Shown: in pieces, positions 9,189 through 57,446 of the stretch | How positions within the stretch are numbered: the stretch's first letter is position 1 | Layout of the letters: each line of letters starts with the position of its first letter | The notes under the pieces: model-generated | The model's database searches: none | What the model was told of the DNA's origin: nothing | What the model saw: the letters and a program-made list of their open reading frames with translations, nothing else | Source: Octopus bimaculoides | Lineage: Eukaryota | Direction: 5' to 3' | DNA: 61,260 nucleotides | Assembly (NCBI RefSeq): GCF_001194135.2 | Contig: NC_068988.1 | Location: 59,033,545-59,094,804 of the forward strand | Program-made: the position numbers and the translations under genes

Positions 9189-12100
9189 CTTTTAACCCTG
9201 GTTTTGTTTGAACTCCTGAAGTATTGGAGCCTACAGTACTGCAGCCTACAGTACCATGCTATCTGTTCTTTTCGACTAGGTAATACTTCCTTGATTATTC
9301 TGGACGTCTCAAGGAAGCAAAACCTTTGTAACAGCTTTGTGGGTCACTCTATTCTGATTTCCTTTATATTTCTAGTGATGCCTTCTGATACCGTCCCCAA
9401 CGACCCCAACAATAATTGGCACTATCTTCATTCCTTTCATTTTTTTTATAGCCGGGCTATTTCGTACTATATAAGATGGTATGTGTCTCTATTTTCACCT
9501 TCCTTCTTGATTATTCGTGGGTCAAAAGGACACGCAACATCAATTATATAACACATTGCTGCTCCTTGTCCACCACAACCAGGTGAGGGTTGTTATGCTC
9601 TTGCACCTGATCTGTTTGGACTTGGAAATCCCACAGGATTTTACAGGTCTACCACTCCACTCTCAGCGGTTTGTGCTCTCTAGACCCCCACTTTTTGCAT
9701 AGTTTCCATTGTAGCATTCTCACTACATCATGTCACCACTTATAGTTGCTTGGAGTAAATCTAGGGTATTCTTTAACGATACGGGCAGTGGCTTCGTCCG
9801 CCCTATAACAGACGTACAAAAGTGGAGAGTCTTGCACATTCCTAATGTTGACTCTCTAATTTGTGACCAAAGCTTGGTTTTGTGCTGCCAGTATGGAACT
9901 ATCAGCCTCTTTTTTCAGCGCTCTTTTCTTCAGCGAGTTCAATCTATGATTTCCAGCAACTTCAGTTGTGGTTACATGAAATTAATTGTGTAATTCCTTA
10001 TCGTGTAATGCTTCTTCATATCCTTTTGTACTTCTTGTTTTGAGTTTTTACTTTTTCTCTACTTTGAATAAGCTCTGATGGCATGATACTAATAAGTTTT
10101 CCATAGTTTGGGCTAGGTAATTTTTAAAGATATAGCGTTTGGTGTGCTCGCAGTCTTCCACACTTATAATTTCCCTTCCTCCATTTGCTCTCTTCGTGTA
10201 TATATGTTCAGTATCTGCAGGTGTGTGATTGACTCCATGATTTACTCAATGCTTTCTTGTCTTCTGATCCAACTGCTTTAGCTCATTCTGTATCCACTTC
10301 ATCCCCATCCCGAAATGTTGCGAGTGCGGGCGTGTTTACTTGGTTTGATCAATAAGTATTGGGGCTGTTGTGATGTTAACGAAGCTACAGTATACAGAGT
10401 GAAGTCGCTTGGTACAGATTGACCGTGAACTTTGCTGTGCATGCGTATCAAGTTTAAACGTTCTGGCTCACTTCCACTCTTTCTAGCAGTGCTTGGAAGG
10501 ATTGTGTGTAGCGTGTGATCGTCGTATTGAACATGAGAGAGAAAGGTGAGCAGAGAATCTGCATCAAATGTTGCCAAAAGCTTGGCGATACCTGCTCAGA
10601 GGCCTGCGCAATGTTTTCAGAATGTTTTCATCGTTCTGAACACTATCAAGGAGACCATGTACAACTGAAACCCGAGTGTGCTTTTAGTCAGCTGAAAGCA
10701 GTTTTGGCACAAACTTGCAGACATGCGTCTCATACCCAAATCGTTGGTGATAATTGACTGAAATGAACCGTAACTAATCTGGACATCCTCTTATAGCTCA
10801 TGGATTGTAATTCAGCGATTTTCTGTCACACCTGCACGCACGTTTGCCATGTTTTTCTCACTTCTGCTGCTTGCAAGTCTCAACAGTTTTTCGGCCATTT
10901 TGGAAACGTGTGAAACACTCGTACACTTGTGTACGGCTCATACACTTTCTGCAACTTTGCGTAGGCCTCTGGTCTGGTATCGCCATGACAACTTTAGCTT
11001 TGTTACTATGGCAACAGTCCGGATACTTATTGATCTGACCGCGTATTGCCAAAATAATATCTCTGACATTCAGCTTTGAATCCAATATTTGTCTCATTCA
11101 CTGCTGTTATTCTTTCTTTGTCTGCTCTGTTATCGAATCGTGACTAATTCCACTGCCTCAAGTATCCCCAGGTATTTATATCCGCAAACAAGTTCGATTA
11201 CTTTCACGTCTCTACTTGGCATATATATACTCTCTGTTCGGGTAAGTTTTCCTCATGTCACTACCATTTGAGAACATTTTGAGTTCATATTCGAAAATAT
11301 CCACAGAAACTGGTCGAGACTGAACTGTTCTATCTCACTGATTGTGAACAACTTCCTGATGGTTAAGTTTACTTTTACCACTTCCCAAATCATATCCCAA
11401 TTTTGTCTTCTGTAGTGTTTCCTTCAAGACGATTATATCCAGCGCAATTATCAGTGAGGATACATTGTTCCCCTGAGAGATTCATCTCCTAATCTTCACA
11501 TCTAATACCAAATTCCCTGCTGTCAATTCAGTTCTCCAGAATTTCTTACTGTTCCATTTTCATGTGTTGTGCTACTCCATACATTTCCATAGTTTTGTTA
11601 TCAAAGAATGTTGTATCATAACATTTGCCTTTATAAAAACCAATCCAAGCTATGCTCAGATTTGTGTATCTTCGCCTGCCGTTTCTGATAATTATTCAAT
11701 CAATTAACAGCTGATCTTTCGTTCCGTGATTCCTCTTTCGGCACCCTTTCTCTTCAATAGTTAGTGAACAGCATTTTTCTAAATATCTATAGGGTGCACC
11801 GCTCAAAGTACCTGATAACCGTTTCCAAATTAGCGGAAGACACGATGGATATAATGTTGCCATCTCAGGATCGTTGGCACACAACAATATATTTTTCTTT
11901 GTCATCAAGCTGAGTACTAATCCTGCGAGCATTCATCCAGCAGTTGCACCAGCCTTTCATCGAGCCCTCTCAGCATCTTCGTGGACACCATCTGATTCCT
12001 TCAAATTTGAGAATTTCTGTAACTAATTTTTTCATTATTTCTATACTATTTCAGATAACCATGGCCCTGTGTATTACTTAAACTGTCTTGGATTCCAGGA

Positions 12101-15706: not shown

Positions 15707-16041
15707 AAAACAATTGCAGCGTAGAACGTGTTTATAAGCCATTTAAAATAACACACAAAAATCGTTAGATTCACTTCAACATTTAAATTTAATTTGTCAA
15801 AATATTTTCGTCGATTTGAGACCGCGACCTGTTCAATGACAAAATTCTGTCCTGCATCTCTGTATGCAGCACAGAATTTTGCATCTCTGTATGCAGCAAA
15901 AAATTCTGTCAGTGAGCAGGTTGCGGTCTCAAAGCGACGAACATATTTTGACAAATTAAATTTAAATGTTGAAGTGAATCTAACGGTTTTTGTGTGTTAT
16001 TTGAAATGGCTTATAAACACCTTCCACGTTGCAATTGTTTT
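15707..16041. repeat. Foldback/palindromic element, ~140-bp inverted arms
   Basis: 15707-15846 is the near-perfect reverse complement of 15902-16041; the spacer has two copies of tgcatctctgtatgcagca. Confidence 0.9.
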
Positions 16042-17989: not shown

Positions 17990-19660
17990 AGATCCTCACA
18001 CGCACACATGAACACACACACACATATACTGAGAGGGAGACAAGCTGGCACACAGGTAGTGGGACATACACACGCACCCATACACATGTTTATACACACA
18101 TAAATACATTCTCACTCCATCTATGTACACGTGCCAACACATTCACATCCACTCCCACCCGTTATTACACCCTTAATACTATTTCAGATTACCTCTCAGA
18201 CACCCTTCAAACTACCCTGATTCACTACTGACATTCCCATCTATGCGCAAGTGCAAAAACACATATACACACACACAACTACTCGTACACATACCAGTCA
18301 CTATAGCTGCAGATATCTCACTACAGCATCAACACGTACACAGGCCACTCACACAACACAAATACATCTAAACAGATAATACATCACAGACACACAGTGA
18401 ATATCACCACACACATACACACAAACACACACAAACACATACGCACAAACACACACAAACACATACACACAAACACACACACGCACTTACACACACATAC
18501 ACACAGATAAACATTCTTCAAACTCTCCTGTCGCAGAAAGCACTTTCTCTTTGTCCATCTACTTCCGGTCGTTTAAAAAATGTAACTACACGAGGCGGTT
18601 GGCGATTTTTTCCCTTCATCTTGCCCATATGTATATATTGATATTGATATTAATTAATATTCAATGTTTACCCTATTGTTTAATTTTATGTATATATATA
18701 TATATATATATGTGTGTGAGAAAGTTGGTATGTGAAAGCACGTGGTTGGATGTATAAAAGATAATAAGAGTGAAAAAACTACAGAAGGCTTGTGTTACAT
18801 GGTTAAAGTATATATTTAAATTATGTCAGAAAAATGTAAGAAAAATGTTATAAAAATGTTATAAAATCTTTTTGGTATACAATGTTTATATACCAAAAAG
18901 ATTTTATAACATTTTTATAACATCTTTCTTACATTTTTCTGACAATAATTTAAATATATACTTTAACCATGTAACAGAAGCCTTCTGTAGTTTTTTCACT
19001 CTTATTANNNNNNNNNNNNNNNNNNNNNNNNNNNNNNNNNNNNNNNNNNNNNNNNNNNNNNNNNNNNNNNNNNNNNNATATATATATATATATATAAACC
19101 CACGTCCTCCAGACGCATCTCCACAAGAACACACGTGCACACCCACATATACACATTCCCGTACATATGTCAACACATACACAAACACATGCCAACACAT
19201 ACACGCGTACATACACACACGTACATATGCCAACACATACACACACACACACAAACACACTCACCGATTCACACAGCCACACCAACTCATACTCACACCC
19301 ACTTCAGACTGCCTCTGCCTCTTACTCACTTTCGACCCTTCCATCTATGCACATATGCAAACGCACACACATACATTCACACACCCGTCACTATAGCTGC
19401 TAACCTCTTAGAGGAACAGTAACAGATACGCACACAGATCCTATCACACACACACACGAACATAAACACACACACAGTTAATACCACAAACGCAGACACG
19501 CTACTACGCATAAGCGTACTCACGCATTTACTGCCACGCACACATACAAGCTACCATACATACACAAGCTACCACATTCACACTGACGCTTTTCACACTC
19601 TCCTGTCCCAGAAGGAACTTTCTCTTCATTCTTTCTACTTCCGGTCACTTTTGAATTGTA
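17990..19660 (+). repeat. Two diverged CA-rich direct repeat units (~17990-18575 and ~19090-19660)
   Basis: Colinear shared blocks gtcactatagctgc (18297/19387), ctctcctgtc.cagaa.g.actttctct (18523/19598) and tctacttccggtc (18558/19634). Confidence 0.65.
18762..19007. repeat. Near-perfect AT-rich hairpin (~118-bp arms, 9-nt loop)
   Basis: 18762-18879 vs 18889-19007: 2 substitutions and 1 indel; the right end runs into an N-gap. Confidence 0.92.
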
Positions 19661-21083: not shown

Positions 21084-21118
<35 letters not shown>

Positions 21119-21228
21119 CACAAACACACACATATATTCAACTCTACGATGAAAGTAAACACACAAAGTTTGTTCTTTGTTTTTTAGAAGCGTTGAGATG
21201 TATTGTAAGATACAGAAATAAATTTATT

Positions 21229-21461
21229 TCTCAAACGCGTGATAATACTATAAAATAGCGTGATCAGGATAAATTATCCATATATTGCAGAAAAATACGT
21301 TACCGGCCAGCCATGAGACTCGAACTCACATCTCTGTGATTACGCGTCAAGTGTTTTACCATTAAACTAAACTGCCCGGCCGGCCGGTAACGTATTTTTC
21401 TGCAACATATTGATAATTTAACCTGATCACTCTATTTTATAGCATTATCACGCGTTTGAGA
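21229..21461. mobile_element. MITE-like element with 80-bp inverted arms enclosing a tRNA-like sequence
   Basis: 21229-21308 vs 21382-21461 are 75/80 identical as inverted repeats; the right end abuts a gap, so a target duplication is not visible. Confidence 0.85.
21305..21376 (-). tRNA. tRNA-Thr(CGT)-like sequence (probably a pseudogene or Pol III unit) inside the inverted-repeat element
   Basis: Minus strand GGCAGTT TA GTTT AATGGTA AAAC A CTTGA CGCGTAA TCACAG AGAT GTGAG TTCGAGT CTCAT GGCTGGCC: intact D-arm and T-arm, A/B boxes, anticodon position CGT; imperfect acceptor and anticodon stems, and G at U33; TTTTT 9 nt downstream. Confidence 0.7.
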
Positions 21462-21550
21462 NNNNNNNNNNNNNNNNNNNNNNNNNNNNNNNNNNNNNNN
21501 NNNNNNNNNNNNNNNNNNNNNNNNNNNNNNNNNNNNNNNNNNNNNNNNNN

Positions 21551-21605
<55 letters not shown>

Positions 21606-21699
21606 ATGTATACATATATATATGTGTGTGTTTGTGTTTGTGTATGTATATGTATATATACACACACACATATATGTATATTTATATATATAAACATTT

Positions 21700-21925
21700 G
21701 TGTGTGGCTGTGTTCGTCCCGCTGCCGTCGCTTAACAACCGACATTGATCTGTTTACTTCCACCGAAACTTAACGGTTATGCAAAAGTGACGATAGAATA
21801 AGTTCTAAGCTTACAACAAATAAGTCCTGGTCTCGATTCCTTCGACTAAAGCGGGTTCTCCAGCATCATGGCCGCAGTGACATGTCTGAAACACGTAACA
21901 GAAAAAACAAATAAAAGAATAATCA
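21700..21925 (+). mobile_element. tRNA-derived SINE, 3' part
   Basis: gatagaataagttctaagcttacaacaaataagtcctggtctcgat...ttctccagcatcatggccgcagt...ctgaaacac is homologous to the fuller copy at 53222-53630. Confidence 0.75.
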
Positions 21926-23664: not shown

Positions 23665-23904
23665 GACACACACACACACACACACAAACGTGCACATAAA
23701 TAGCGGTATGTGCCTACGAGTGTGAATGTATGTGCACATGTGTGTGTGTGTTAAAGCGAGTTAAAGAGACAGAGAGTGCGAATGAGAGAAGACAAAATTA
23801 AAAAAAAAAGGGATGCCATAAGACATTCCAGAAATACATCATAGTGATGGGCCAAATTTGCTAGCAAATGCTTACTATTTTTCTAGCGATCGATCTCTCA
23901 TGCT

Positions 23905-24146
<242 letters not shown>

Positions 24147-24966
24147 GGAATGGGAAAAAAATGTCTTCTAATCAGCTTAATTTGCTTAATTTGGCAATAT
24201 AAATTGTACATTTTTGTTTGAAGAAATATGAACAAAAGTGTAAAACTCACATTTCTAAACAATCATGAAATAATAATTTAAACTGATTAGAACTACGTGT
24301 GAATTCATTCTTTTTATTTTTTCAAATATACATAACTATATCAAGGGCCTCGCACATTTTCTAATATCCATACATATAAATTCGACAGGGGCGATTCTTT
24401 CCTATCTTGGGATTCACGGTCAAACGGCTGGGTGGAATTGCGAGAAAAATTATACAGATGTGTAGAATTATCCGGTGGTGATGCTGGGCTTTCTATTTTT
24501 TCATAGCTCCCATGGTTACTGAGCTAATCTACTATAATAATACTCTTGTGTTTATGAATGAGAAAGAAAGGGAGGTAGATGAATAAGGAAGGAAGGGGTG
24601 ATATCATACTTGGTAGTGGGATGATGAAAATTGTACGCTGAAAAAAATAAATCAGACAGCGTTTCAACTCTGTGTGAATATATGTGTGTGTATGTAAAAG
24701 CGGGGCATGTGAATGTCTGTGAGTGCGCGCGCTTGCGTGTGTGCGTGTGCGCGCGAAATGGAAGTTCGATGCTTCATCTTTGTTCGCTTAGTATTTGGGT
24801 TAATCTTTTGATTTGATTGAAAAAACTCATTCTAAAATTGTTTTTTAACGCAAACGTGGCCAAACAAGTGGAATAGCCACATCATCCAAACCGACCGGGC
24901 GAAACCGGACTTAGCTGATATATATATATATATAGATATATGTATGTATGTATGTATGTATTTATA

Positions 24967-25800
24967 TATCAGGTCATCCCATAAGTTCTGTCCGAATTTT
25001 GAATGAAGAAAACAAGTGATCAAATGTTATATTTAATTGAAATTTAATCATCAATGTACTTTCCTGCATTATTTATGACTTCCTTTCGTCTATTTACAAG
25101 CATTTAAATCCCATCAATGTAAAACTCTTTTAGTTTCAAAGTGAAGAACTCTGAAGTGTCAGTTTCGACCTCCTCCTGGCTTGCGAAAGTTATGTCCCCC
25201 AAATGATTCTGTAAACTACGAAACAAATGGTAGTCTAAAGGAGTAAGGTCGGGAGAATAAGGTGGATGAGGAATCTTTTCAGAACCAAGCTCTTCGATCT
25301 TTTGTGATGTGATCTTTGCAGTATGTGGTCGCACACTGTCCTGATGAAACATCACTCCTTTTACTAAAGCGGGTCTTTTTTTCTTCAAAGCTTGGTTCAA
25401 ACACTCTAATTGCTGGCAGTAGGCTTGAACATTGATTGTTGCATTAGGTGATAACAATTCAAAGTGAATTTCTCCTTTGCAATCCCACCATATACAGAGA
25501 AGAACGTTTTTTCCATGAAGTTCCCTTCTCGGTTGTGGTTAAGCTTTTTCCCTTTTACCAAGCTATTGTTTACGACGTTTAACATTTCGATATAAGATCC
25601 ATGTTTCGTCAGCAGTCACAAGTCTATCCAAAAAGGGTGGAATGAGTTCTCAAGATTGGAAAGAAGAGCAGATGTCAACTGGGAGTTGCAGTTGCTTTCG
25701 GACAATTCATGAGGCACCCATTTTCCAAGTTTAGGAACCTTTCGAAGTTGTTGAAAATGACGATAAAATGTTGTATGGTTTCAACTAAGCTTTATTGCCA
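24967..25800 (-). mobile_element. Decayed mariner (DD34D) transposon, 3' two-thirds
   Basis: Minus strand KWVPHEL (~25705-25725), LVTADETWILY, FHQDSVRPH, PHPPYSPDLTPLDYHLF; probable TA plus terminal repeat at 24967; the 5' end is lost in microsatellite/gap. Confidence 0.92.
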
Positions 25801-28055: not shown

Positions 28056-28263
28056 TTCCTTTACTCTTACTTTGACTTGTTTCAGTCATTTAATTGCATA
28101 CATACAAATCGACCTCGAGACTTATTCCTTGTAAGCCTAGTACTTATTCGATCGGGTCTTTTGCAGAACCGCTAAGTAGCCACATCAACGTCGGCTGTCA
28201 AGCGATGGTGGGATAAGAGACACAGACACACAACTACATATACTGACACACAACTACATATAC

Positions 28264-28312
<49 letters not shown>

Positions 28313-28438
28313 CATATATATATACACTACGGGCTTCTTTCAATTTTCATCTACCATATCCACCCACAAGTCTTTGGTAGGCCCAACCTGGCAACAGTAG
28401 AAACACTTTCCTAAGTTACCACGGTTTTAGACCAAACT
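28056..28438 (-). mobile_element. tRNA-derived SINE with internal (CA)n
   Basis: cttgtttcagtcattt...gtaagcctagtacttattc...gctgtcaagcgatggtggg...acgggcttctttc...ccatatccacccacaag, colinear with 53222-53630. Confidence 0.8.
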
Positions 28439-29305: not shown

Positions 29306-30526
29306 GACATCGCTCAAATACGTTTAAATCGTCTGCCTCGTTTCCTAGTCACCTGAAATTTAAGGATGGATATCACCAGGATAGTTTATTTGCTACCGAT
29401 ATCAAACCAAGAACTGACTCCACGAGAACAACACCAACGACCAGAGTAAGAAGAGAAACGATGACTATATCAAAAACGATAACATCTACAGCGAAAATAG
29501 CACTATCCTTAAAATTAAGGAATAGAACACTAACAATGTCAAAACATGCGAAAAAAAGCAATACAGGATATCCAGTATCCAACATACGATCTTCATCATT
29601 ATCTTCGTCGTCGTCATCATCATCATCATTGTTATCATGGCAGTCCCAATTGTCAACGTTATCGTCATCTTTATTAACAGCATCATTACTGTTCACTCCA
29701 CCTTCTACCACTTCTTCCATTCCGCCCATCTACTCCAACTACTCCAACTACTCATCAACAAGCCTCTTCCCAACATCTTCACCGTCAAGATCACAATTAT
29801 TATTTCATTTGTCAACGGAAAAAAACAAATTGAAACTGAGTCAAACGTTCAACAGATCTTTTTCAAATGATTTAGAAGTCGTATACCCAATCGTAAGAGA
29901 TAAAAAATCAACAATATCTAAAGCAGCAATCGCTGCCGAAGCCAGCCTGGTATATGAATTAAGGCAATCTAATGGTAATGAGAGCTTTATCTACTCTAAT
30001 AGCTCAAATATGCAAAGTGGAATTAATATATCTTTGATAACAACAACACTTCCAAATAATTCGACGGTTTCTAACAATTCAAGTGAACTTAAGACAACCA
30101 CCAACAAAACAGCTGAAGAACCGATACAAAGAGAAACAACAGGACTTATAAATAATATCAATAATGATGTTGCTCTTGCTCATTCTCAAACTTCATGCCG
30201 AATGAAATTGACAACAAACGAAGGAGTGATTGTAAATCGGGGTTACCCTTATGCATATGCAAGCTTCGAAAGTTGTGAATGGGAAGTACAAATTTCTCGT
30301 GAATTTCGCATAAAAGTGATTTTTGAAGATTTAGATTTAGAATTTAATAAAGACGTTCTCGAAATTTCGTTCGTTGATGAGAGCAAACGGTTCTTTCGCC
30401 GTTATACAGGTAGAAAATTACCACCTCCTATCATTCTTGATACTGATCATCTGACATTTGTTTTCCGTTCCGACAGTAAAGGATATGGGAGAGGATTTTA
30501 TATACGTTTCGAACAGACTCACCAAG
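29306..30526 (+). CDS. Large exon: RVRR site, Ser/Thr-rich stalk, CUB domain 1
   Basis: 1221-nt open phase 1-1 exon (tttgtag| ... caag|gtaagt); CUB from 30196: CRMKLTTNEGVIVNRGYPYAYASFESCEWEVQ...FEDLDLE..DVLEI..YTG..FVFRSDSKGYGRGFYIRF. Confidence 0.93.
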
Positions 30527-31602
30527 GTAAGTCGTCATGAATGTGTTTATTCTTGCAATTCTTCGTGAGAAATTAGGTGTTAGTTAAATAGGTAGACACT
30601 TCTTTCCTTTCCCAAGAAAGCAATCATCAGCATTATCATAATCAGCTCATTCGAATGCGCATCTACGCATTTGTTTATATAAAGGTATTTATATAAAGGT
30701 ATTTATATAAAAGTATACAATTGAAATATAAATGGATTATTAATATATGCAATACAAATATGAATACAGAAACATTGTCCACAATCATTTCGCTCCACTT
30801 TACATATGAAGTAGTTAATTTATTTATGTCATTCCCACCCCCATCATCAAGTTCTTGTTTGCTTCTGAAAGTATTAATGTAGAACACTTAGCCAGTGTTC
30901 CTTATATAGGTGGTACGTCAATGAGATTTAGATGATATTTCTATCGTTGAAAAGGCTATTGAATTTCTCACATGCCAAATTCCTAATTAAAGATAACAAA
31001 ACTTAGGGGTATATGAAATTAAACGTTGCCTGGCTAAAATTTCGGAACTTTTCATAATATTACGCATAAAATATACTCAATCGCTAAACATTATATCTGA
31101 ATAAACTAGGGTTAGTTCTGCCACGTTTACCAATTTTCTAACGTTGAAAGATATGCTTTTCAAACGTACGATAAAAATGTATTTTAAGTCATCAAAAAGA
31201 AAATACAAATCGGAAACGCAAACGATTATTTCATTAATTTGGAAGATCATTGGTGTGAAAACATCAGTTTCAGTTTAGCGAAACATTCCATTCATGCTAT
31301 GGAACCTGTATCAGGACCTAATTTTCTGTTTTGTTATTCACTTCTAACAAAAGCTACATAAACCGACTAATACTTCACTGTCGTCTCCCTCCGATATTTG
31401 CGCTCACACACACACACACACACACACATACACCTAAACCTTCACGGATACACAAGTACATGCTCNNNNNNNNNNNNNNNNNNNNNNNNNNNNNNNNNNN
31501 NNNNNNNNNNNNNNNNNNNNNNNNNNNNNNNNNNNNNNNNNNNNNNNNNNNNNNNNNNNNNNNNNNNNNNNNNNNNNNNNNNNNNNNNNNNNNNNNNNNN
31601 NN

Positions 31603-33500: not shown

Positions 33501-33912
<412 letters not shown>

Positions 33913-33935
33913 AATTCCTCTATTTAGATATAGAG

Positions 33936-33975
<40 letters not shown>

Positions 33976-34189
33976 TTACAGGTGTGTGTGTGACCCTGTG
34001 TGTGACTATGTGATCATATATGTGAATGCCCAAGTATATGTATGGATATATTTCGTACGCTTGCAAAAAGAAATTTCTGTATTTCAATGAGATTTTTAAA
34101 TTTTATTTTCCGTGTTAATCGGTATATTACTCACACATGCACACACCCACACACCCACACAGTACAAACATATGCTGGAACACCGCATG

Positions 34190-34327
34190 ACTTATTCTTT
34201 ATAAGCCTAGTACGTATTTTATCGGTGTCTTTTGCCTAACTGCTAAGATACGGGGACGTAACCACAAGCGATGGCGGGGTAGGGGGACAAATACGAGCAC
34301 ACAACTACACAAACACACGCATATATG

Positions 34328-34379
<52 letters not shown>

Positions 34380-34396
34380 CATATATATACACACAC

Positions 34397-34478
<82 letters not shown>

Positions 34479-34600
34479 GACGTACTTCTTACAATTTCCA
34501 TTTACCAAATCCACTCACAAGTTTCTTGTAGATGACACTAGTCCAAGGTGCCACGTAGTGGGACTGAACCCGGAACCATGTGGTTAGGAATCAACCTTCA
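34190..34600 (-). mobile_element. tRNA-derived SINE with internal microsatellite
   Basis: taagcctagtac...caagcgatggcgggg...ccaaatccactcacaag...ccaaggtgccacgtagtgggactgaacccggaaccatgtgg; the head carries a B-box on the minus strand. Confidence 0.8.
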
Positions 34601-35383
34601 GGGATTTCGAAATGCCAGAGATCTACGCCTCGAAAAGTATGGGTCAGATTCTGAGGGCTGCAAATGCAGTTGAATCATGCAACTCGATTCCCTTTCGTGT
34701 AGGCTTGTTCATGCACACAGATGCTGCTCCGCCACCAGCAGCTAACACAAAATTCTACAGGCTCAGATCCACATTCTTTTACGACTGATGTATGCTTATA
34801 ATATAAATCTTGTAATATACGTAATGAACCAAATATTCACAGAGTGTAATTGAACTTTTAACTGTCAAAGTGTAAAATCTGCATTATGAAATCCTTTTCG
34901 CATTTTATTATGTAGTGTAATCCATTAATTGCTCAATAGCTATACTATCAAAAATTGCGTAGTATGAATTGCAGTCAACCCATTCATCTTCTGTATTATA
35001 TTATACACAGCGTTAAGTGCACATAGTGTTTTGTTACATTCACTGTGTTCTAAATATCAAAATGTATCTATTTGATATTGCTTTTCTCGTTGCATTCTCT
35101 GGATATTGTATTGTGAGTATTAATATTATTCCTTTTGAATACTTTATTAGTCAAATATCCGTCAGAATGCTACAGCCACAATTGCAAGGTCTTTTTAGGA
35201 GTCACATTTAATTTTTTTCTTACAATTTAAGTTTCTGTGTTTGTTCATCAGTACAATTCAATGAATGGTGATCTACATGTTTCTAAGGAAGAAATGTGTA
35301 GAATATACCAAAAATGCTATCTTTGAAAACTACAAGAAGCAAATAATGATCTAAAGCAAATTATAACTAATGTCTATTTGCAG

Positions 35384-38399: not shown

Positions 38400-39198
38400 T
38401 ACGAGATATTATGAATAAGTATCCGGACTATTGCCATAGTAACTAAGCTAATGTAGGCAAAGTAAAGGCACTTGGAAAAGATTGACCTTGATCTCTAGGC
38501 TGCAAATGCCCTAAATTTTAAATCTCTAGGTTACTTCTGCTGTTTACAGCACACCTTGCAAGAAAGGTGTGTAGCGTATGATCATCGCATTGACCATGAC
38601 AAAGAAAGTTGTCATGGCAATACCTGTTCAGAGGCCTACGCACGGTTGCAGAAAGTGTATGGAGAGGGGTGCATGAGCCGCACACAAGTGAACGACTGGT
38701 TCAGACGTTTCCAATTTGGCCGAAAAATGTCGATATTGACCAACGTCCAGGGAAACCCACAACCAGCAGATCTGAAAAAAAAGCCCCATCGCAGGTGTGC
38801 GTGCGGCTGTGAGGGGAAATCGTCTAATCACCGTCAGTAAGTTATCAGACAATCGGCAGATTAGTTACGTTTCAGTTCAGTCCGTTATCACTGAAGATTT
38901 TGGTATGAGATGCTTGTCTAAACTTTGTGTAGGGTTCTGAGCAGATATCTCCAAGCTTTTAGCAAAACTTGATACTGATTCTCTCTTCAACTTACCCTGC
39001 CATTGTCAATGTGACGATCACCCGTTATACACCTTCCTTCCAAGCACTGTGTGAATAGCGGAAGTGAGCTAGAATCTGAAAATTTAGTGCGCACGTACTG
39101 CAGAGCTCAGGGTCAATCTGTGCCAAGCGACTTTAATCTGCGTGTTTTAGCTTCGTTACAATGACAGCATTTCTTATATTTATTGATCAAACCACGTA
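38400..39198. mobile_element. Second copy of the 5'/5' mariner derivative (opposite orientation to 10337-11045)
   Basis: TA at 38400-01 and 39197-98; long + arm with EAYARLQKVYGEGCMSRTQVNDWFRRF...ITEDFGMR; short - arm with ERISIKFC*KLGDICSEPY. Confidence 0.85.
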
Positions 39199-46866: not shown

Positions 46867-47192
46867 GTATATATGTATATATGTGTGTGTGTATATATAT
46901 GTATATATATATATATACATATAATTCAAAGATACAGGATGTAGTTTCCTCGTAAGGGATTTTTTAATAAAAATCCCTATATCAACTGGCGTTCTCAAAT
47001 ATATTGAAAGAAAGTTTCGCAATATATATAGATAAACTGTCTTATAATGTGTAAAGTTGATAAAAGAAAATGCAGAAGAAATATAGTGGATAATTGGTTA
47101 ATCTTATTTGTATCACGATCAAAAGAAGTAATACATTTAAGATTCATGATATAGAGGAAGCGTATCAACAAAAGAAATAAACGTAAATATAT

Positions 47193-47360
47193 CCTACATA
47201 TGTTTCAATCGGGCTACTGGGTTTCGATCATCAGCATTCAAGCAATGTTAGATGTAATATAACCCCACATTATGTCCGGATCTCATGACGGAGTGAAGTT
47301 TACTTTCTGGTGGTGAACAACGAAATCGAAACCTAATTGCCGGATTGAAACATATCTAGG
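47193..47360. repeat. Small inverted-repeat element (~36-bp imperfect arms)
   Basis: cctacatatgtttcaatcgggctactgggtttcgat vs the reverse complement of atcgaaacctaattgccggattgaaacatatctagg: ~31/36. Confidence 0.7.
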
Positions 47361-47533
47361 ATTCTTTTATGTTTCTTTCTTTTGTTGATTCGGTTCCTTT
47401 ATATCTGAATCTTATACGTGTTGCTATTTTTCATCGTGCCACAAATATAATTAAGCAAATATCCACTATATTCCTTCTCCATTTCTTTTACATGTATATA
47501 TAATTATACATATATATATGTATTTGTACGTAC

Positions 47534-50640: not shown

Positions 50641-50665
50641 AATTCAATTTATATATATATATATA

Positions 50666-50860
50666 TATGTAAATATAATATGTGACAATTATTCGGTGGC
50701 CAGGATTTAACTCCGAGTTTTGGATGTTGGGGCGGAAACCCACGCCGGCGCATCACTTGAGTTATCGGGCCATCAAATGACATTTTCATAGCATTGTTTT
50801 CATGGCCCGATTTATGGTTTTGACCTTAAAACGTAATTTTCATAAGCTGGCCACTGATAA
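50666..50860 (-). mobile_element. Partial, inverted copy of the 33601-33912 MITE
   Basis: gtaaatataatatgtgacaattattcggtggccagg..ctccgagtt..ggcggaaacccacgccggc matches the reverse complement of 33820-33910; no second TIR seen. Confidence 0.8.
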
Positions 50861-52143: not shown

Positions 52144-53221
52144 GTAAACGTAAATTTTATCATACGGACTTTTATTAATCTATTCCAATTAACATCGTGT
52201 CAAGATTTCATATAACCCACTTTACTGTGTATTGTTTGAAATCCCTGCAATCTGTTGTGACTACACTTCCGCAAATATTTACTTCAAAGAACATGAAAAA
52301 ATCACAATTCTATTAACGTAACTAGAACTTCCTTTGAAATCTGTGCTAATATTTATGCTATGCCTATATCTATAGGCACATCAAATTCGGCGGTCGTGTA
52401 TGTATATCAGTCACTGGTTTTCCGTCTGTCAGCTACACGCACAATCACGCACGTGTTTTCGACATACAGACCACACCACCATACATGCATATTTACATAT
52501 CTTTGCGTGTGTGTAAAAGTATAGGTACATGTATATGCACAAGCACTGACGCATTTGTATATACACATGATATATATATATAGCTCATTCCCACTATTCG
52601 TTTCTGGGTGCTAGCATATTGTGCGTGCTCGTGTGTTTCTGTGTGCCTGCATATTTATTATATGACATACAATAATGCACACTCATAGTTGACCGCGTTA
52701 TTCTATAGATAACTACATCGATGCAAAATAAGTTTCTTGTATTCTTTCAGCGGAAAGCCTTTCCCCGTTGCGAACGGGAGTTGAATTTGAATCTGGTTGC
52801 ATGTTAAAATTTAATTTACCAATTTAAATAGGGTCAATTTTGGAAAGGAAAATGTTTTTAGTTTCCGAAATGCAGTTGCCCAATACAGTAAGTACGTAAT
52901 TACCGATTAACTTAATCAGGCAGAAACCAATACCAGATTGCAAACACAACTAATGATTGCAGATATTTACACGGTCAGTCATTTGTAGGACTAGAGTGTT
53001 GAATATTCAAACTACGGTGCTTTCATATAATACCATCTGATACAGTGTGTATTTTTGTTTATATTCCCCTCCTATACCATGGACAGATTTTGGATTTTAT
53101 ATGTATAATGCAATCTTGTCTTGTTCACTGTTGATTGTCCTTACACTATGGAATACTTTCAGCAATCGGGGACAGTTTCAAATTATGCAGTTATTGTGTG
53201 TAAAGTGTTTTTCAAGTATTC

Positions 53222-53630
53222 TTTTATTCTGTCACTTGTTTTAATCATTTGACTGTGGCCATGCTGGAGCACGGCCTTTAGTCGAGTAAATCGACCCCAG
53301 TATTTATTCTTTGTAAGCCTAGTACTTATTCTATCAGTTTTCTTTTGCCGAACCACTTGATTACGGGAATGTAAACACCGGAATCGGCTGTCAATCGATG
53401 TTGGGGAGACAAACACAGACACACACACAGACACACACACAGACACACAAATAATCACACGCACACACACACATATATGACGAGCTTCTTTCCTTTTCCG
53501 CCTACCAAATCCACTCACAAGGCTTTGATCGGCCCGAGAGTATAGTAGAAGACACTTATCTAAGGTGTCACGCAGTGGAACTGAACCCGGAAACATGTGG
53601 TTGTTAAGCAAGCTACTCACCACACAGTCG
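53222..53630 (-). mobile_element. Near full-length tRNA-derived SINE
   Basis: Minus-strand head gactgtgtggtgagtagcttgc..ccgggttcagttccactg (A/B-box-like), central (CA)n, tail ggccgtgctccagcatggccacagtcaaatga..aacaagt. Confidence 0.88.
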
Positions 53631-53809
53631 CTCATGTTTAATATTTATTGCAATGGCTCACATACAAATAAATACTCACACACAAACATATACACACACA
53701 AACACGCACACACTCACACACACACTCAGACACACACAACAAACATACACACAAACATATATCAGGTGAGAGAATAAGAGAGAGAAAGTGAGTGTGTATG
53801 AGAGAGAGA

Positions 53810-55319: not shown

Positions 55320-56870
55320 ATGTGAGTCGTAATTACCTGGCAACCCTACCCTTCGACAAAATACTTTGCATCAATCAACATACGAGTGACCAAATACAAG
55401 CACGCTTTACCAAAGCCAGTATTAAACTTAGCTTTCAGAACAGTACACAAGAATATGGTGTGGCAGAGAGGCACTACAACTGGACAAGATGTCTGCAAGT
55501 GGCCTGCATATGCTCATATAGCGCACAAAAAAAAAAAAAAGAAATGGAAATTGTTTGCTTCCCAACGGACAAACCTGGCAGAATATCGATAGGCAGCCTG
55601 TCGAACTACATCCAAGCAATGCAACCCCACGTCACAAATATGTTGGAAACAACAGTACTGTAGTATGAGGTGAGAGAGAATATCCACAATGCTAATATGA
55701 CGATGTGTTTAAACATCCTAGGGGCATAATAGCTCACAGCCAACAACTTCCACGCCACTAATAACGATATCTCAGTGCTGTATGGGCTCCTCAAGCACCA
55801 TAAGGCGACCACTGACATTGTAACAGAACCCACAACACTGGTCTGCAGAGCCAAGGTTGCCAACAACTACCAGATTTACTACTTCCTCTCTATGATCATA
55901 CGTACTCTGATCAAAATGTTCCCGGATGTGTGTGACAGAACAAAGGACCTTCTGATCAGAATAATGACTGTTACCATGCCTACAACCTTACGGGATGCAT
56001 AGTAGGTAATATGGCTATAGTATCCTTATACCAATCCATTGATGTTGATTTCGCTGTGGAGAAATGCATGGAGGTGATCAGCGAGAGCGATGCAGAGTTT
56101 CGTGGAGTTCACATAGAAGAATGAGGCCTCTTGCTGAAAGTGATACGTGACAATGGTTACTTAAATGACATGACCATAGTTGCTTTTGTTCCACTAGATC
56201 GGTAATAGGTAGACACGCTTCTATGGTAAAGAAAACCCGTAGAGAAATGGAACGGGTGAACCAGAGCTAGACGGACCCCCGAAAACGATGACGAAAACCA
56301 AGACCGCAGTCAAGGGTGACATATTTACGTTTAACAAAAAGATATACGTCCAAAAGGAATGTGCAGCCATCGGTGTCAGTATCTCTGGCGATGTGGCTAA
56401 CTTATTTATGGTATGGTGGGATAGGAAACTCAAAGAAAAATTAGCAGGGATCTTCATAACCCTAACCTTATACTCCCGCTATGTGGATGATATCAACATA
56501 GTAGCCAAAGCACTGCTACAAGACAATGTTGATGATCTAGAAGCTAACACTATGGAGGGCATTCAGCAAGTAGCTACCTCCATACACCAGAGTATCAAAG
56601 CAACGGTAGACTACCCGAACCAGCAACCCATCTATAGCCTACCAGATTTAGACAGGGAACTCTAGCTAAAAACCAAGAACAATAAGGTCCAGATCCTTCA
56701 CTCCAATTATTTCAGACCCATGGTCTCTAAATACCTTGTCCACAAGAACACAGCAATTGCGGACAACACCAAGTTCAATATTCTTATAGCGGACTTGGTG
56801 AGAATGATGAGAAATGTATCTCGCATGTGCTACCGTTTGGAATTGGAAAGACGCATACGACACTTCACCC
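55320..56870 (+). mobile_element. Decayed Penelope-like element reverse transcriptase
   Basis: PTDKPGRISI; DIFTFNKKIYVQKECAAIGVSISGDVANLFM..W; LYSRYVDDINIV; VDYP...LPDLD; ILIADLVRMMRN (PLE RT and thumb pattern); broken by stops; no GIY-YIG domain seen. Confidence 0.82.
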
Positions 56871-56944: not shown

Positions 56945-57155
56945 TTTATGTGTGTATTTGTCCACCCCACTCTTCACCACTTGGCAACCGTAACTCTCGT
57001 AAACTATCGGTTCAGCAACAGAGACCGATAGAATAAATAGTAGGCTTAAAAATAAGTCCTGGGATCGTTTTGTTTGAGTTAAACCCCTCGAGGTGGTGCT
57101 CCAGCATAACCGCAGTGAAAATGACCGAAACAAGTAAAAGAATAGAAGAATAAAT
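56945..57155 (+). mobile_element. tRNA-derived SINE, 3' part
   Basis: gaccgatagaataaatagtaggcttaaaaataagtcctggg..ggtggtgctccagcataaccgcagt..gaccgaaacaagtaaaagaat. Confidence 0.8.
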
Positions 57156-57446
57156 CTAGAAAAAGAACTCAAATAAATGTTTAACGCATTTAGTCACGCA
57201 ATAATTATTCATATTTTTCAGTAGTGAGACATTTTATTATTTTTTGATTGTACGAATGAAAGCAGCTTTGATAATAGTTAATACTTTGAATATATTAGTT
57301 CTATGATCTATTTCTGTAATATTGAAATAATTTGTATGTTACATATGCGCTTCATCTAGTTGTACATAGTGATGCGATTTTATGTATATTGCGAATAATT
57401 GTAAGTCCTAGAGGTATAAACACACACAGACACACAGAGACACACA

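What the first reader, a model, noticed from the sequence alone, without database searches (positions are those of the whole stretch)
21229..21461. Inverted-repeat element whose only cargo is a complete tRNA-like Pol III unit
Seen: 80-bp arms (75/80) enclose a 73-bp spacer that reads on the minus strand as a cloverleaf. It has an A-box (TAGTTTAATGG), a B-box (GTTCGAGTC), intact D and T arms and a CGT (Thr) anticodon position. Its 3' end overlaps the left arm, and that arm supplies TTTTT 9 nt downstream, a correctly placed Pol III terminator. The sequence is not the head of the local SINE family and has no SINE body or tail. Inference: a DNA-transposon (MITE)-like vehicle that disperses tRNA-like/TFIIIC-binding units, or a tRNA gene captured at the centre of a foldback. 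It could seed Pol III transcripts, tRNA fragments or insulator sites. I do not recall a described family like this, but could not search.
Basis: partly seen in the sequence, partly recalled or inferred. Interest (0 to 1): 0.8.

Follow-up and report, generated by a model that had tools for sequence, protein, structure and literature searches.

The report
Decayed tRNA-like gene inside a palindrome
A worn-out tRNA-like gene copy sits at the centre of a real 233-base hairpin-forming repeat, but one end of the repeat runs into an assembly gap and no second copy could be found, so the idea that it is a new jumping element carrying a tRNA unit is untested.

Summary
Arms 21229-21312 and 21378-21461 are 78/84 complementary. 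They flank a 65-nt centre, and Rfam calls 21305-21376 (minus strand) a tRNA at 34.3 bits (gathering score 29). The conserved A-box and B-box bases are intact, and TTTTT lies 9 nt downstream in the left arm.

Three things weaken the interpretation.
1. The unit is a decayed tRNA. ARAGORN misses it at default settings. It has G33 instead of U33, a bulged anticodon stem and a G.G mismatch in the acceptor stem, and it folds no better than shuffled sequence.
2. The right arm ends on the last base before an N-gap (21462-21550). That gap is followed by a 5'-truncated copy of the local SINE. The element's true ends and any target-site duplication are therefore unseen, and the arms may be longer.
3. Arms and core are single-copy in the 61-kb window. 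No accessible collection holds this host genome, so copy number is untested.

Best reading: a tRNA-gene-derived unit with its native terminator, whose 3' acceptor strand and trailer were duplicated in inverted orientation onto its 5' side. It is probably inert. A dispersed MITE-like family remains possible (about 0.3). An assembly artefact is unlikely because the arms differ at six positions.

The parts
21229..21312 (.). Left arm of the inverted repeat. On the minus strand it is the 3' acceptor strand plus the 3' trailer of the tRNA-like unit.
   Evidence: 78/84 complementary to 21378-21461. The inner 8 nt overlap the tRNA-like 3' end.
21378..21461 (.). Right arm of the inverted repeat, forming the 5' flank of the tRNA-like unit on the minus strand. 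Its outer end is the last base before the N-gap.
   Evidence: The six differences from the left arm lie at arm positions 19, 31, 41, 51, 56 and 81, counted from the outer end.
21305..21376 (-). tRNA-like core, a degenerate cloverleaf with CGT (Thr) in the anticodon position.
   Evidence: Rfam RF00005 at 34.3 bits against a gathering score of 29. ARAGORN calls it only at relaxed threshold. RNA fold z = -0.55.
21359..21369 (-). A-box-like TAGTTTAATGG (tRNA positions 8-18), with U8, A14 and the GG of the D loop present.
   Evidence: Read and the cmscan alignment.
21317..21325 (-). B-box-like GTTCGAGTC (T loop), with G53, T54, T55, C56, A58 and C61 present.
   Evidence: Read and the cmscan alignment.
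21340..21346 (-). Anticodon loop CGCGTAA. It has G at position 33 where tRNAs have U, and the stem next to it carries a 1-nt bulge.
   Evidence: cmscan alignment and ARAGORN drawing.
21291..21295 (-). TTTTT run 9 nt downstream of the tRNA-like 3' end, a Pol III terminator-like site inside the left arm.
   Evidence: Read.
21214..21231 (.). Perfect 18-nt palindrome AGAAATAAATTTATTTCT straddling the outer edge of the left arm.
   Evidence: Besides one (CA)n/(TG)n junction, it is the only zero-loop perfect palindrome of 18 nt or more in the window that is not a simple repeat.
21462..21550 (.). Assembly gap of 89 N directly abutting the right arm. It hides the true right end.
21554..21913 (+). Neighbouring copy of the local SINE: internal (TA)n(TG)n tract plus the conserved 3' part. 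Its roughly 170-nt head is missing and would lie in or left of the gap. This is context, not part of the element.

Best explanation
The locus is a tRNA-gene-derived Pol III-type unit, Thr-CGU by position, that had already decayed as a tRNA. It lies at the centre of a genuine imperfect palindrome.

The palindrome is best explained by an inverted duplication. The 3' acceptor strand of the unit and its native 3' trailer, including the T5 terminator, were copied in reverse-complement orientation onto the 5' side of the unit. This would have happened by fold-back or template-switch replication or repair. The arms have since diverged by 7%.

What is shown: the palindrome, the tRNA homology, the intact A-box and B-box bases, the T5, the defects of the tRNA, and the truncation by the gap.

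What is inferred:
- The direction of the duplication.
- That the unit could still recruit TFIIIC and Pol III and give a transcript of about 90 nt. Its leader and trailer would pair and extend the acceptor stem.
- That it has no function as a tRNA and is most likely a neutral, decaying repeat.

Whether this one locus is all there is, or one copy of a family, is open.
For: - The palindrome is real.
- The arms are not identical (6 of 84 positions differ), so this is an aged genomic structure.
- The tRNA homology is beyond chance. The score is 34.3 bits. E = 0.002 counts all 4227 families, so for the tRNA model alone it is about 5e-7 for the window.
- The 3' acceptor strand GGCTGGC pairs with the 5' strand GGCAGTT at 6 of 7 positions counting G.U pairs. 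I estimate about 1% for this by chance. The inner end of the left arm is therefore part of the original tRNA and not an unrelated palindrome centre.
- A T-run within about 10 nt downstream is the normal layout of a eukaryotic tRNA gene (established knowledge). This argues that the left arm is the native trailer and the right arm is the copy.
- The copy ends in GGCCGGCC directly upstream of tRNA position 1. It pairs better with the 3' strand than the tRNA's own 5' strand does.
- The tRNA-like part is more decayed than the arms: three real defects plus extra G.U pairs in 72 nt, against 7% between the arms. It had probably already degenerated when the palindrome formed.
- Fold-back and template-switch formation of inverted duplications at short inverted repeats is an established mechanism (PMC3907307, PMC10766183, PMC4689423).
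- Only one copy of arms and core occurs in the window.
Against: - One copy in 61 kb says almost nothing about a gigabase-sized genome.
- The window holds at least five other palindromic or inverted-repeat elements. One of them has a second partial copy. Hairpin-shaped mobile elements are therefore common here, and a random palindrome of this size is quite likely to be a transposon copy.
- The junction does not look like simple priming on the acceptor stem. The copied strand sits next to the tRNA's own 5' strand rather than replacing it.
- The published fold-back cases are large events, not events of 80-200 bp.
- The right end is unseen.
Confidence: 0.45

Rival explanations
1. It is one copy of a dispersed, non-autonomous DNA-transposon-like family (MITE or foldback type). 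The family consensus would contain the tRNA-like Pol III unit between long inverted arms, and so would spread TFIIIC/Pol III sites.
For: - Size, lack of coding capacity and long, well-matched arms fit.
- The window holds several other hairpin-shaped repeats, and one has a second copy.
- Octopus genomes are reported to hold many TIR and MITE families, with a TIR expansion at Jukes-Cantor distance of about 0.09 (PMC13282606). That is of the same order as the 7% between the arms.
- The invariant A-box and B-box bases are all intact, while the defects lie in the anticodon arm and acceptor stem. That is the pattern seen in tRNA-derived promoter modules. With only three defects it is not significant; I estimate p about 0.15.
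Against: - There is no second copy of arms or core in the window.
- Ends and target duplication are unobservable.
- The arms do not match any other repeat in the window, including the region of the mariner transposase remnant at 25104-25457 (Pfam). The terminal repeats of that mariner copy were not located.
- No described precedent turned up in the literature searches.
- The other local foldbacks examined (15707-16041, 18762-19007) pair almost to their centre. This one has a 65-nt non-palindromic centre.
Confidence: 0.3
2. A tRNA-derived fragment, such as a retro-copy or SINE head, was inserted into the exact centre of an older perfect palindrome. The apparent 3' acceptor pairing and the T5 terminator would then be coincidences supplied by the palindrome.
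For: - Removing 21313-21377 leaves a palindrome that pairs right to its centre...TTACCGGCCAGCC|GGCCGGCCGGTAA....
- Cephalopod genomes carry very many tRNA-derived loci, about 17,000 in the giant squid (PMC6962438). Insertions of such pieces are therefore frequent.
Against: This reading needs three coincidences: insertion at the exact centre, an acceptor-like pairing of 6 of 7 positions with the arm (my estimate about 1%), and a T5 at the right distance (my estimate about 7%). There is no CCA, poly(A) or SINE body or tail, and no target duplication around the 65 nt.
Confidence: 0.1
3. Assembly artefact: the contig end next to the gap was folded back on itself by chimeric reads or by gap filling, creating a false right arm.
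For: - The right arm ends exactly at the gap.
- A second palindrome, 18762-19007, also ends exactly at a gap. Two such coincidences would not occur by chance; my estimate is about 1e-6. Gaps and palindromes are therefore causally linked in this assembly.
Against: - A fold-back of one template would give identical arms. Here 6 of 84 positions differ, and the other palindrome is 95.5% identical, not 100%.
- The link is explained just as well if palindromes are hard to assemble or are simply cut by the gap.
- Most gaps in the window are followed by (TA)n tracts. This one is followed by the microsatellite of a SINE. These are ordinary causes of gaps.
Confidence: 0.05

Closest known systems
tRNA pseudogenes and tRNA-derived repeats of cephalopod genomes
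   Same: Weak but significant tRNA covariance-model score, intact A-box and B-box bases, and loss of tRNA-specific features. Such loci are very common in cephalopods: about 17,000 tRNA-derived loci are reported in Architeuthis dux (PMC6962438).
   Different: It has its own T5 terminator and no SINE body or tail. It is unrelated to the SINE family of this window. It sits at the centre of an 84-nt-armed palindrome that overlaps its acceptor stem.
MITEs (miniature inverted-repeat transposable elements)
   Same: Small, non-coding and bounded by inverted repeats. Other inverted-repeat elements are present in the same window.
   Different: Defined termini, a target-site duplication and multiple copies are not shown. 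The arms are long and reach the centre, rather than being short terminal repeats. I found no description of a MITE whose cargo is a tRNA-like Pol III unit.
Fold-back or template-switch inverted duplications at short inverted repeats
   Same: Two arms in inverted orientation around a short unique spacer. The pivot lies at a pre-existing short inverted repeat, here the tRNA acceptor stem. The mechanism is described in PMC3907307, PMC4689423 and PMC10766183.
   Different: The described cases are kilobase- to megabase-scale copy-number variants, whereas this one has arms of about 84 nt or somewhat more. The junction here places the copy beside the 5' acceptor strand, not on it.
Cassandra TRIM retrotransposons carrying a 5S Pol III unit in their terminal repeats (recalled from memory: Kalendar et al. 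2008, not checked here)
   Same: The concept of a non-autonomous mobile element that carries an independently transcribable Pol III unit.
   Different: Cassandra is a plant LTR-type retroelement, its unit is 5S and not tRNA, and the unit lies in direct terminal repeats. This is a lead from memory only.

Membership tests
tRNA (Rfam RF00005), as a tRNA-derived sequence | Covariance-model score at or above the gathering score over the full model | tested here: met
   34.3 bits against 29, model positions 1-71 of 71, 21305-21376 minus strand.
Functional tRNA gene | Canonical cloverleaf with U33, a regular 5-bp anticodon stem and a fully paired acceptor stem; detected by standard finders at default settings | tested here: not met
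   G33, a 1-nt bulge (or only 3 bp) in the anticodon stem, and a G.G mismatch plus two G.U pairs in the acceptor stem. ARAGORN at default settings finds none. The minimum-free-energy fold is not a cloverleaf, z = -0.55.
Pol III type-2 transcription unit | A-box and B-box with conserved bases at normal spacing, and a T-run of 4 or more shortly downstream | tested here: met
   Sequence features read: T8, A14 and GG in the A-box; G53, T54, T55, C56, A58 and C61 in the B-box; T5 at positions +10 to +14.
Pol III type-2 transcription unit | Actual TFIIIC/Pol III occupancy or a transcript | not testable with these tools
   No expression or ChIP data are available.
MITE | Defined terminal inverted repeats at both ends | tested here: inconclusive
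   The inverted repeat is present, but the right arm is cut by the N-gap at 21462, so the true termini are unknown.
MITE | Target-site duplication flanking the element | not testable with these tools
   The right flank is N.
MITE | Many dispersed copies with arms and centre together | tested here: inconclusive
   One copy in the 61-kb window. There were no matches in the viral, metagenome or prokaryote collections, but these do not contain the host genome.
MITE | Small size and no coding capacity | tested here: met
   233 nt visible. The longest ORFs inside are 20-26 aa.
tRNA-derived SINE | tRNA-related head joined to a body and a LINE-related or simple-repeat tail, with no early terminator | tested here: not met
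   T5 lies 9 nt after the head. The downstream 174 nt (21131-21304) match no other copy and not the local SINE.
Foldback (FB-type) element | Long arms built of tandem subrepeats | tested here: not met
   TRF reports no tandem repeat inside 21229-21461. The neighbouring palindrome 18762-19007 does have 11-nt subrepeats.
Assembly fold-back artefact | Arms identical, because they are copied from one template | tested here: not met
   78/84, with six differences.

The most novel reading that the evidence does not exclude
The locus is one copy of a so far undescribed cephalopod family of hairpin-shaped DNA elements. Each copy would carry a self-contained tRNA-derived Pol III unit (A-box, B-box and terminator). 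The family would scatter TFIIIC/Pol III binding sites and small structured transcripts through the genome by a DNA-based route rather than a SINE-type route.
Probability: 0.2. Interest if true: 0.65.

Novelty: new member of a known kind. Interest (0 to 1): 0.3.

Why it matters
If it is a single locus, it is one more decayed tRNA-derived sequence in a genome type known to hold tens of thousands of them. Its only curiosity is that it shows how a tRNA gene can end up at the pivot of a small palindrome.

If it proves to be a dispersed family, it would be a DNA-mediated way of spreading Pol III/TFIIIC sites. That would be relevant to chromatin boundary elements and to small-RNA production in cephalopods, and it would be a class of cargo not described for MITEs.

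A practical point for the scan: in this assembly, palindromes that run into N-gaps have undefined ends and should not be measured at face value.

Tried and rejected
1. Looking for other copies inside the window. BLASTN with word size 7 of the left flank, both arms and the core found only the element itself.

2. Looking for copies elsewhere by exact pattern. The arm 22-mer GCAGAAAAATACGTTACCGGCC gave 0 hits in viral contigs and metagenome contigs. The D-arm 27-mer pattern gave 0 hits in metagenome, prokaryote-genome and viral contigs. These collections are not expected to hold the host, so the result only argues weakly against a bacterial or phage origin of the core.

3. Protein route to reach eukaryotic assemblies.
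- The 43-aa stop-free translation across the right arm and core had no word-sharing candidate.
- In the exhaustive HMMER search it gave only spurious matches to repetitive ankyrin-like and low-complexity proteins.
- This route was nearly hopeless, because the called ORF in that frame is only 20 aa.

4. Independent assembly of the locus.
- The exact look-up of the 359-aa CUB ORF is not on record.
- The homology search found one relative at 59% identity (P0001).
- Its 21-kb locus L001 shares only the CUB exon and two short repeats with the window, and nothing with the element.
- I ran no further search on sampling that distant genome. My estimate of the chance of hitting a copy was below 5%.

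5. Mitochondrial origin was rejected. The core has canonical D and T loops and 46-47% G+C.

6. SINE-head origin was rejected.

7. The Rfam E-value scan of the whole window gave only microsatellite-driven miRNA-like noise besides the one tRNA hit.

8. Extension of the palindrome to the flanking microsatellites is suggestive but confounded.
- The exact 20-mer ATATATGTGTGTGTTTGTGT occurs only twice in the window, mirrored at 21118-21137(-) and 21618-21637(+).
- The gap length (89 N) is close to the 91 nt that separate the left arm from its microsatellite.
- However, the right-hand tract belongs to a SINE copy.

9. Literature searches for a MITE with tRNA-like cargo or a cephalopod precedent found none.

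Full report
**What is there**

The window is animal DNA, rich in repeats and microsatellites, with ten N-gaps. It contains:
- reverse-transcriptase fragments (81-467, 56288-56665);
- mariner-type transposase remnants (25104-25457, 38556-38840);
- a CUB-domain exon in the ORF 29461-30540.

At the reported place, the repeat finder gives arms 21229-21312 and 21378-21461, 84 nt, 93% complementary, with 65 nt between them. My alignment gives 78/84, with differences at arm positions 19, 31, 41, 51, 56 and 81 counted from the outside. BLAST E-values are about 1e-28 to 1e-32. As single-stranded DNA the 233 nt fold into one hairpin of -92 kcal/mol, z = -22. The inverted repeat is real and far beyond chance.

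**The centre**

Rfam's tRNA model matches 21305-21376 on the minus strand over its whole length at 34.3 bits, against a gathering score of 29. It is the only family in the window above its gathering score. The E-value of 0.002 counts all 4227 families, so for the tRNA model alone it is about 5e-7. The sequence therefore descends from a tRNA.

It is not a working tRNA:
- ARAGORN finds nothing at default settings. It calls tRNA-Thr(cgt) only at lowered thresholds.
- The anticodon loop is CGCGUAA, with G where tRNAs have U33.
- The anticodon stem needs a bulged C, or has only 3 bp.
- The acceptor stem has a G.G mismatch and two G.U pairs.
- The RNA folds no better than shuffles (z = -0.55), and its minimum-energy fold is not a cloverleaf.

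By contrast, the bases that make the internal Pol III promoter are all present. These are U8, A14 and GG in the A-box (21369-21359), and G53, T54, T55, C56, A58 and C61 in the B-box (21325-21317). TTTTT (21295-21291) follows 9 nt after the 3' end, inside the left arm.

1. The right arm ends at 21461, and 21462 is the first N of an 89-N gap. The outer limit of the repeat is set by the assembly. The arms may be longer, and neither termini nor a target-site duplication can be read.

2. The same thing happens 2.4 kb away. The 246-nt palindrome 18762-19007 (95.5%) also ends on the last base before a gap. Two exact coincidences among ten gaps and five palindromes cannot be chance, so palindromes and gaps are linked in this assembly. 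Because the arms differ at six positions here, and are 95.5% rather than 100% identical there, a simple fold-back artefact of one template is unlikely. More likely, palindromes are cut by or cause assembly breaks.

3. The (TA)n(TG)n tract right of the gap is the internal microsatellite of a copy of the local SINE (21554-21913, plus strand). Its roughly 170-nt head is missing and should lie in or left of the gap. The gap may therefore hide the SINE head, the rest of the right arm, or both.

4. A perfect 18-nt palindrome, AGAAATAAATTTATTTCT (21214-21231), straddles the outer edge of the left arm. Besides one microsatellite junction, it is the only zero-loop perfect palindrome of that length in the window that is not a simple repeat. 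I cannot explain it.

**How the palindrome relates to the tRNA-like unit**

On the minus strand the order is:
- 5' arm ...TTGCAGAAAAATACGTTACCGGCCGGCC;
- core GGGCAGTT...CTCAT;
- 3' arm GGCTGGCCGGTAACGTATTTTTCTGCAA....

The first eight bases of the 3' arm are the 3' acceptor strand of the tRNA-like unit. They pair with its 5' strand at 6 of 7 positions counting G.U pairs, which I estimate at about 1% by chance. The inner end of that arm therefore belongs to the original tRNA, and the arm continues as a normal tRNA-gene trailer with a T-run.

The other arm is the reverse complement of the acceptor strand plus trailer, placed directly upstream of tRNA position 1. This layout follows automatically if the 3' side of a tRNA-derived unit was duplicated in inverted orientation onto its 5' side. 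Fold-back or template-switch events at short inverted repeats are established mechanisms (PMC3907307, PMC4689423, PMC10766183), although those cases are much larger.

The alternative is that a 65-nt tRNA fragment landed in the exact centre of an older palindrome. That needs three coincidences: the centre position, the acceptor pairing and the T5.

The tRNA-like part is more decayed than the arms are from each other. It was probably already degenerate when the palindrome formed.

**Single locus or family?**

This is the crux, and I could not settle it.
- Arms, core and left flank occur once in the window. One copy in 61 kb is uninformative for a gigabase genome.
- Exact-pattern scans of the viral, metagenome and prokaryote collections found nothing.
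- Translated searches found nothing meaningful.
- The collections do not contain this host. The CUB exon of the window has a single relative, at 59% identity. The 21-kb locus around it shares nothing with the element. The external negatives therefore carry no weight on copy number.

For a family: the window holds at least five other hairpin-shaped or inverted-repeat elements, one with a second copy. Octopus genomes are reported to be rich in TIR and MITE families (PMC13282606).

Against a family: there is no described precedent for a MITE with tRNA-like cargo. The two neighbouring foldbacks I examined pair almost to their centre, unlike this one.

tRNA-derived loci as such are very common in cephalopods, about 17,000 in the giant squid (PMC6962438).

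**Verdict**

My estimates are:
- 0.45 for a tRNA-gene-derived unit made palindromic by inverted duplication of its 3' side, now most likely inert, although its promoter elements and terminator would still allow a short Pol III transcript;
- 0.3 for a dispersed MITE-like family;
- 0.1 for insertion into an older palindrome;
- 0.05 for an assembly artefact.

Interest is modest until a genome-wide copy search is done. That search and closure of the gap are the decisive steps.

Noticed in passing
window 18762-19007: A 246-nt near-perfect palindrome (95.5%) with 11-nt tandem subrepeats in its arms and a short central loop. Its right arm also ends on the last base before an N-gap (19008-19077), which is followed by (TA)9.
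   Followed up: partly
window 15707-16041, 23896-24155, 47021-47524: Three further long palindromes: 335 nt at 85%, 260 nt at 81% with (TC)n/(TA)n/(ATAG)n at its centre, and 504 nt at 72%. None resembles the finding. No obvious target duplication was seen at 15707-16041.
   Followed up: partly
window 33598-33655 / 33858-33915 and 50655-50777: An inverted-repeat element with 58-nt arms at 98% and a 202-nt spacer. It has a partial second copy about 17 kb away, so it is a genuine multi-copy MITE-like family in this window. A related piece (78%, 133 nt) also occurs in the distant relative's locus at L001:4165-4297.
   Followed up: partly
window 21554-21913(+), 28106-28438(-), 34130-34650(-), 53150-53680(-), 56995-57164(+): A SINE family built of a tRNA-related head, an internal (TA)n(TG)n microsatellite of very variable length, and a conserved 3' part. 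The internal microsatellites account for several of the assembly gaps.
   Followed up: partly
window gaps at 19008, 21462, 22265, 26014, 28439, 41780, 46822, 51455: Eight of the ten N-gaps are followed immediately on their right by a (TA)n tract, and five of these have unique sequence on their left. Gap placement is one-sided, which suggests that the assembler or gap closer fails in one direction at (TA)n.
   Followed up: no
window 21118-21137(-) and 21618-21637(+): The exact 20-mer ATATATGTGTGTGTTTGTGT occurs only twice in the window, in mirrored orientation on either side of the finding. It could mean that the palindrome once extended to the microsatellites, but the right-hand copy lies inside a SINE's internal repeat.
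   Followed up: partly
window 21214-21231: A perfect 18-nt palindrome, AGAAATAAATTTATTTCT, sits exactly at the outer edge of the left arm and overlaps it by 3 nt. About 0.5 such palindromes are expected by chance in the whole window. Its meaning is unknown.
   Followed up: partly
window 29461-30540 and L001:10001-10990: A long ORF ending in a CUB domain (Pfam E = 4e-18), probably an exon. Its only relative in the protein collection is at 59% identity, on a 132-kb contig of ENA assembly ERZ21867824. That assembly appears to be a eukaryotic genome held among the metagenome assemblies.
   Followed up: partly
window 10337-11034 and 38411-39198: A repeat of about 700 nt present twice (70-76% identity, partly inverted). 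The second copy overlaps a Mos1-type HTH_48 ORF (38556-38840), so these are mariner-like remnants.
   Followed up: no
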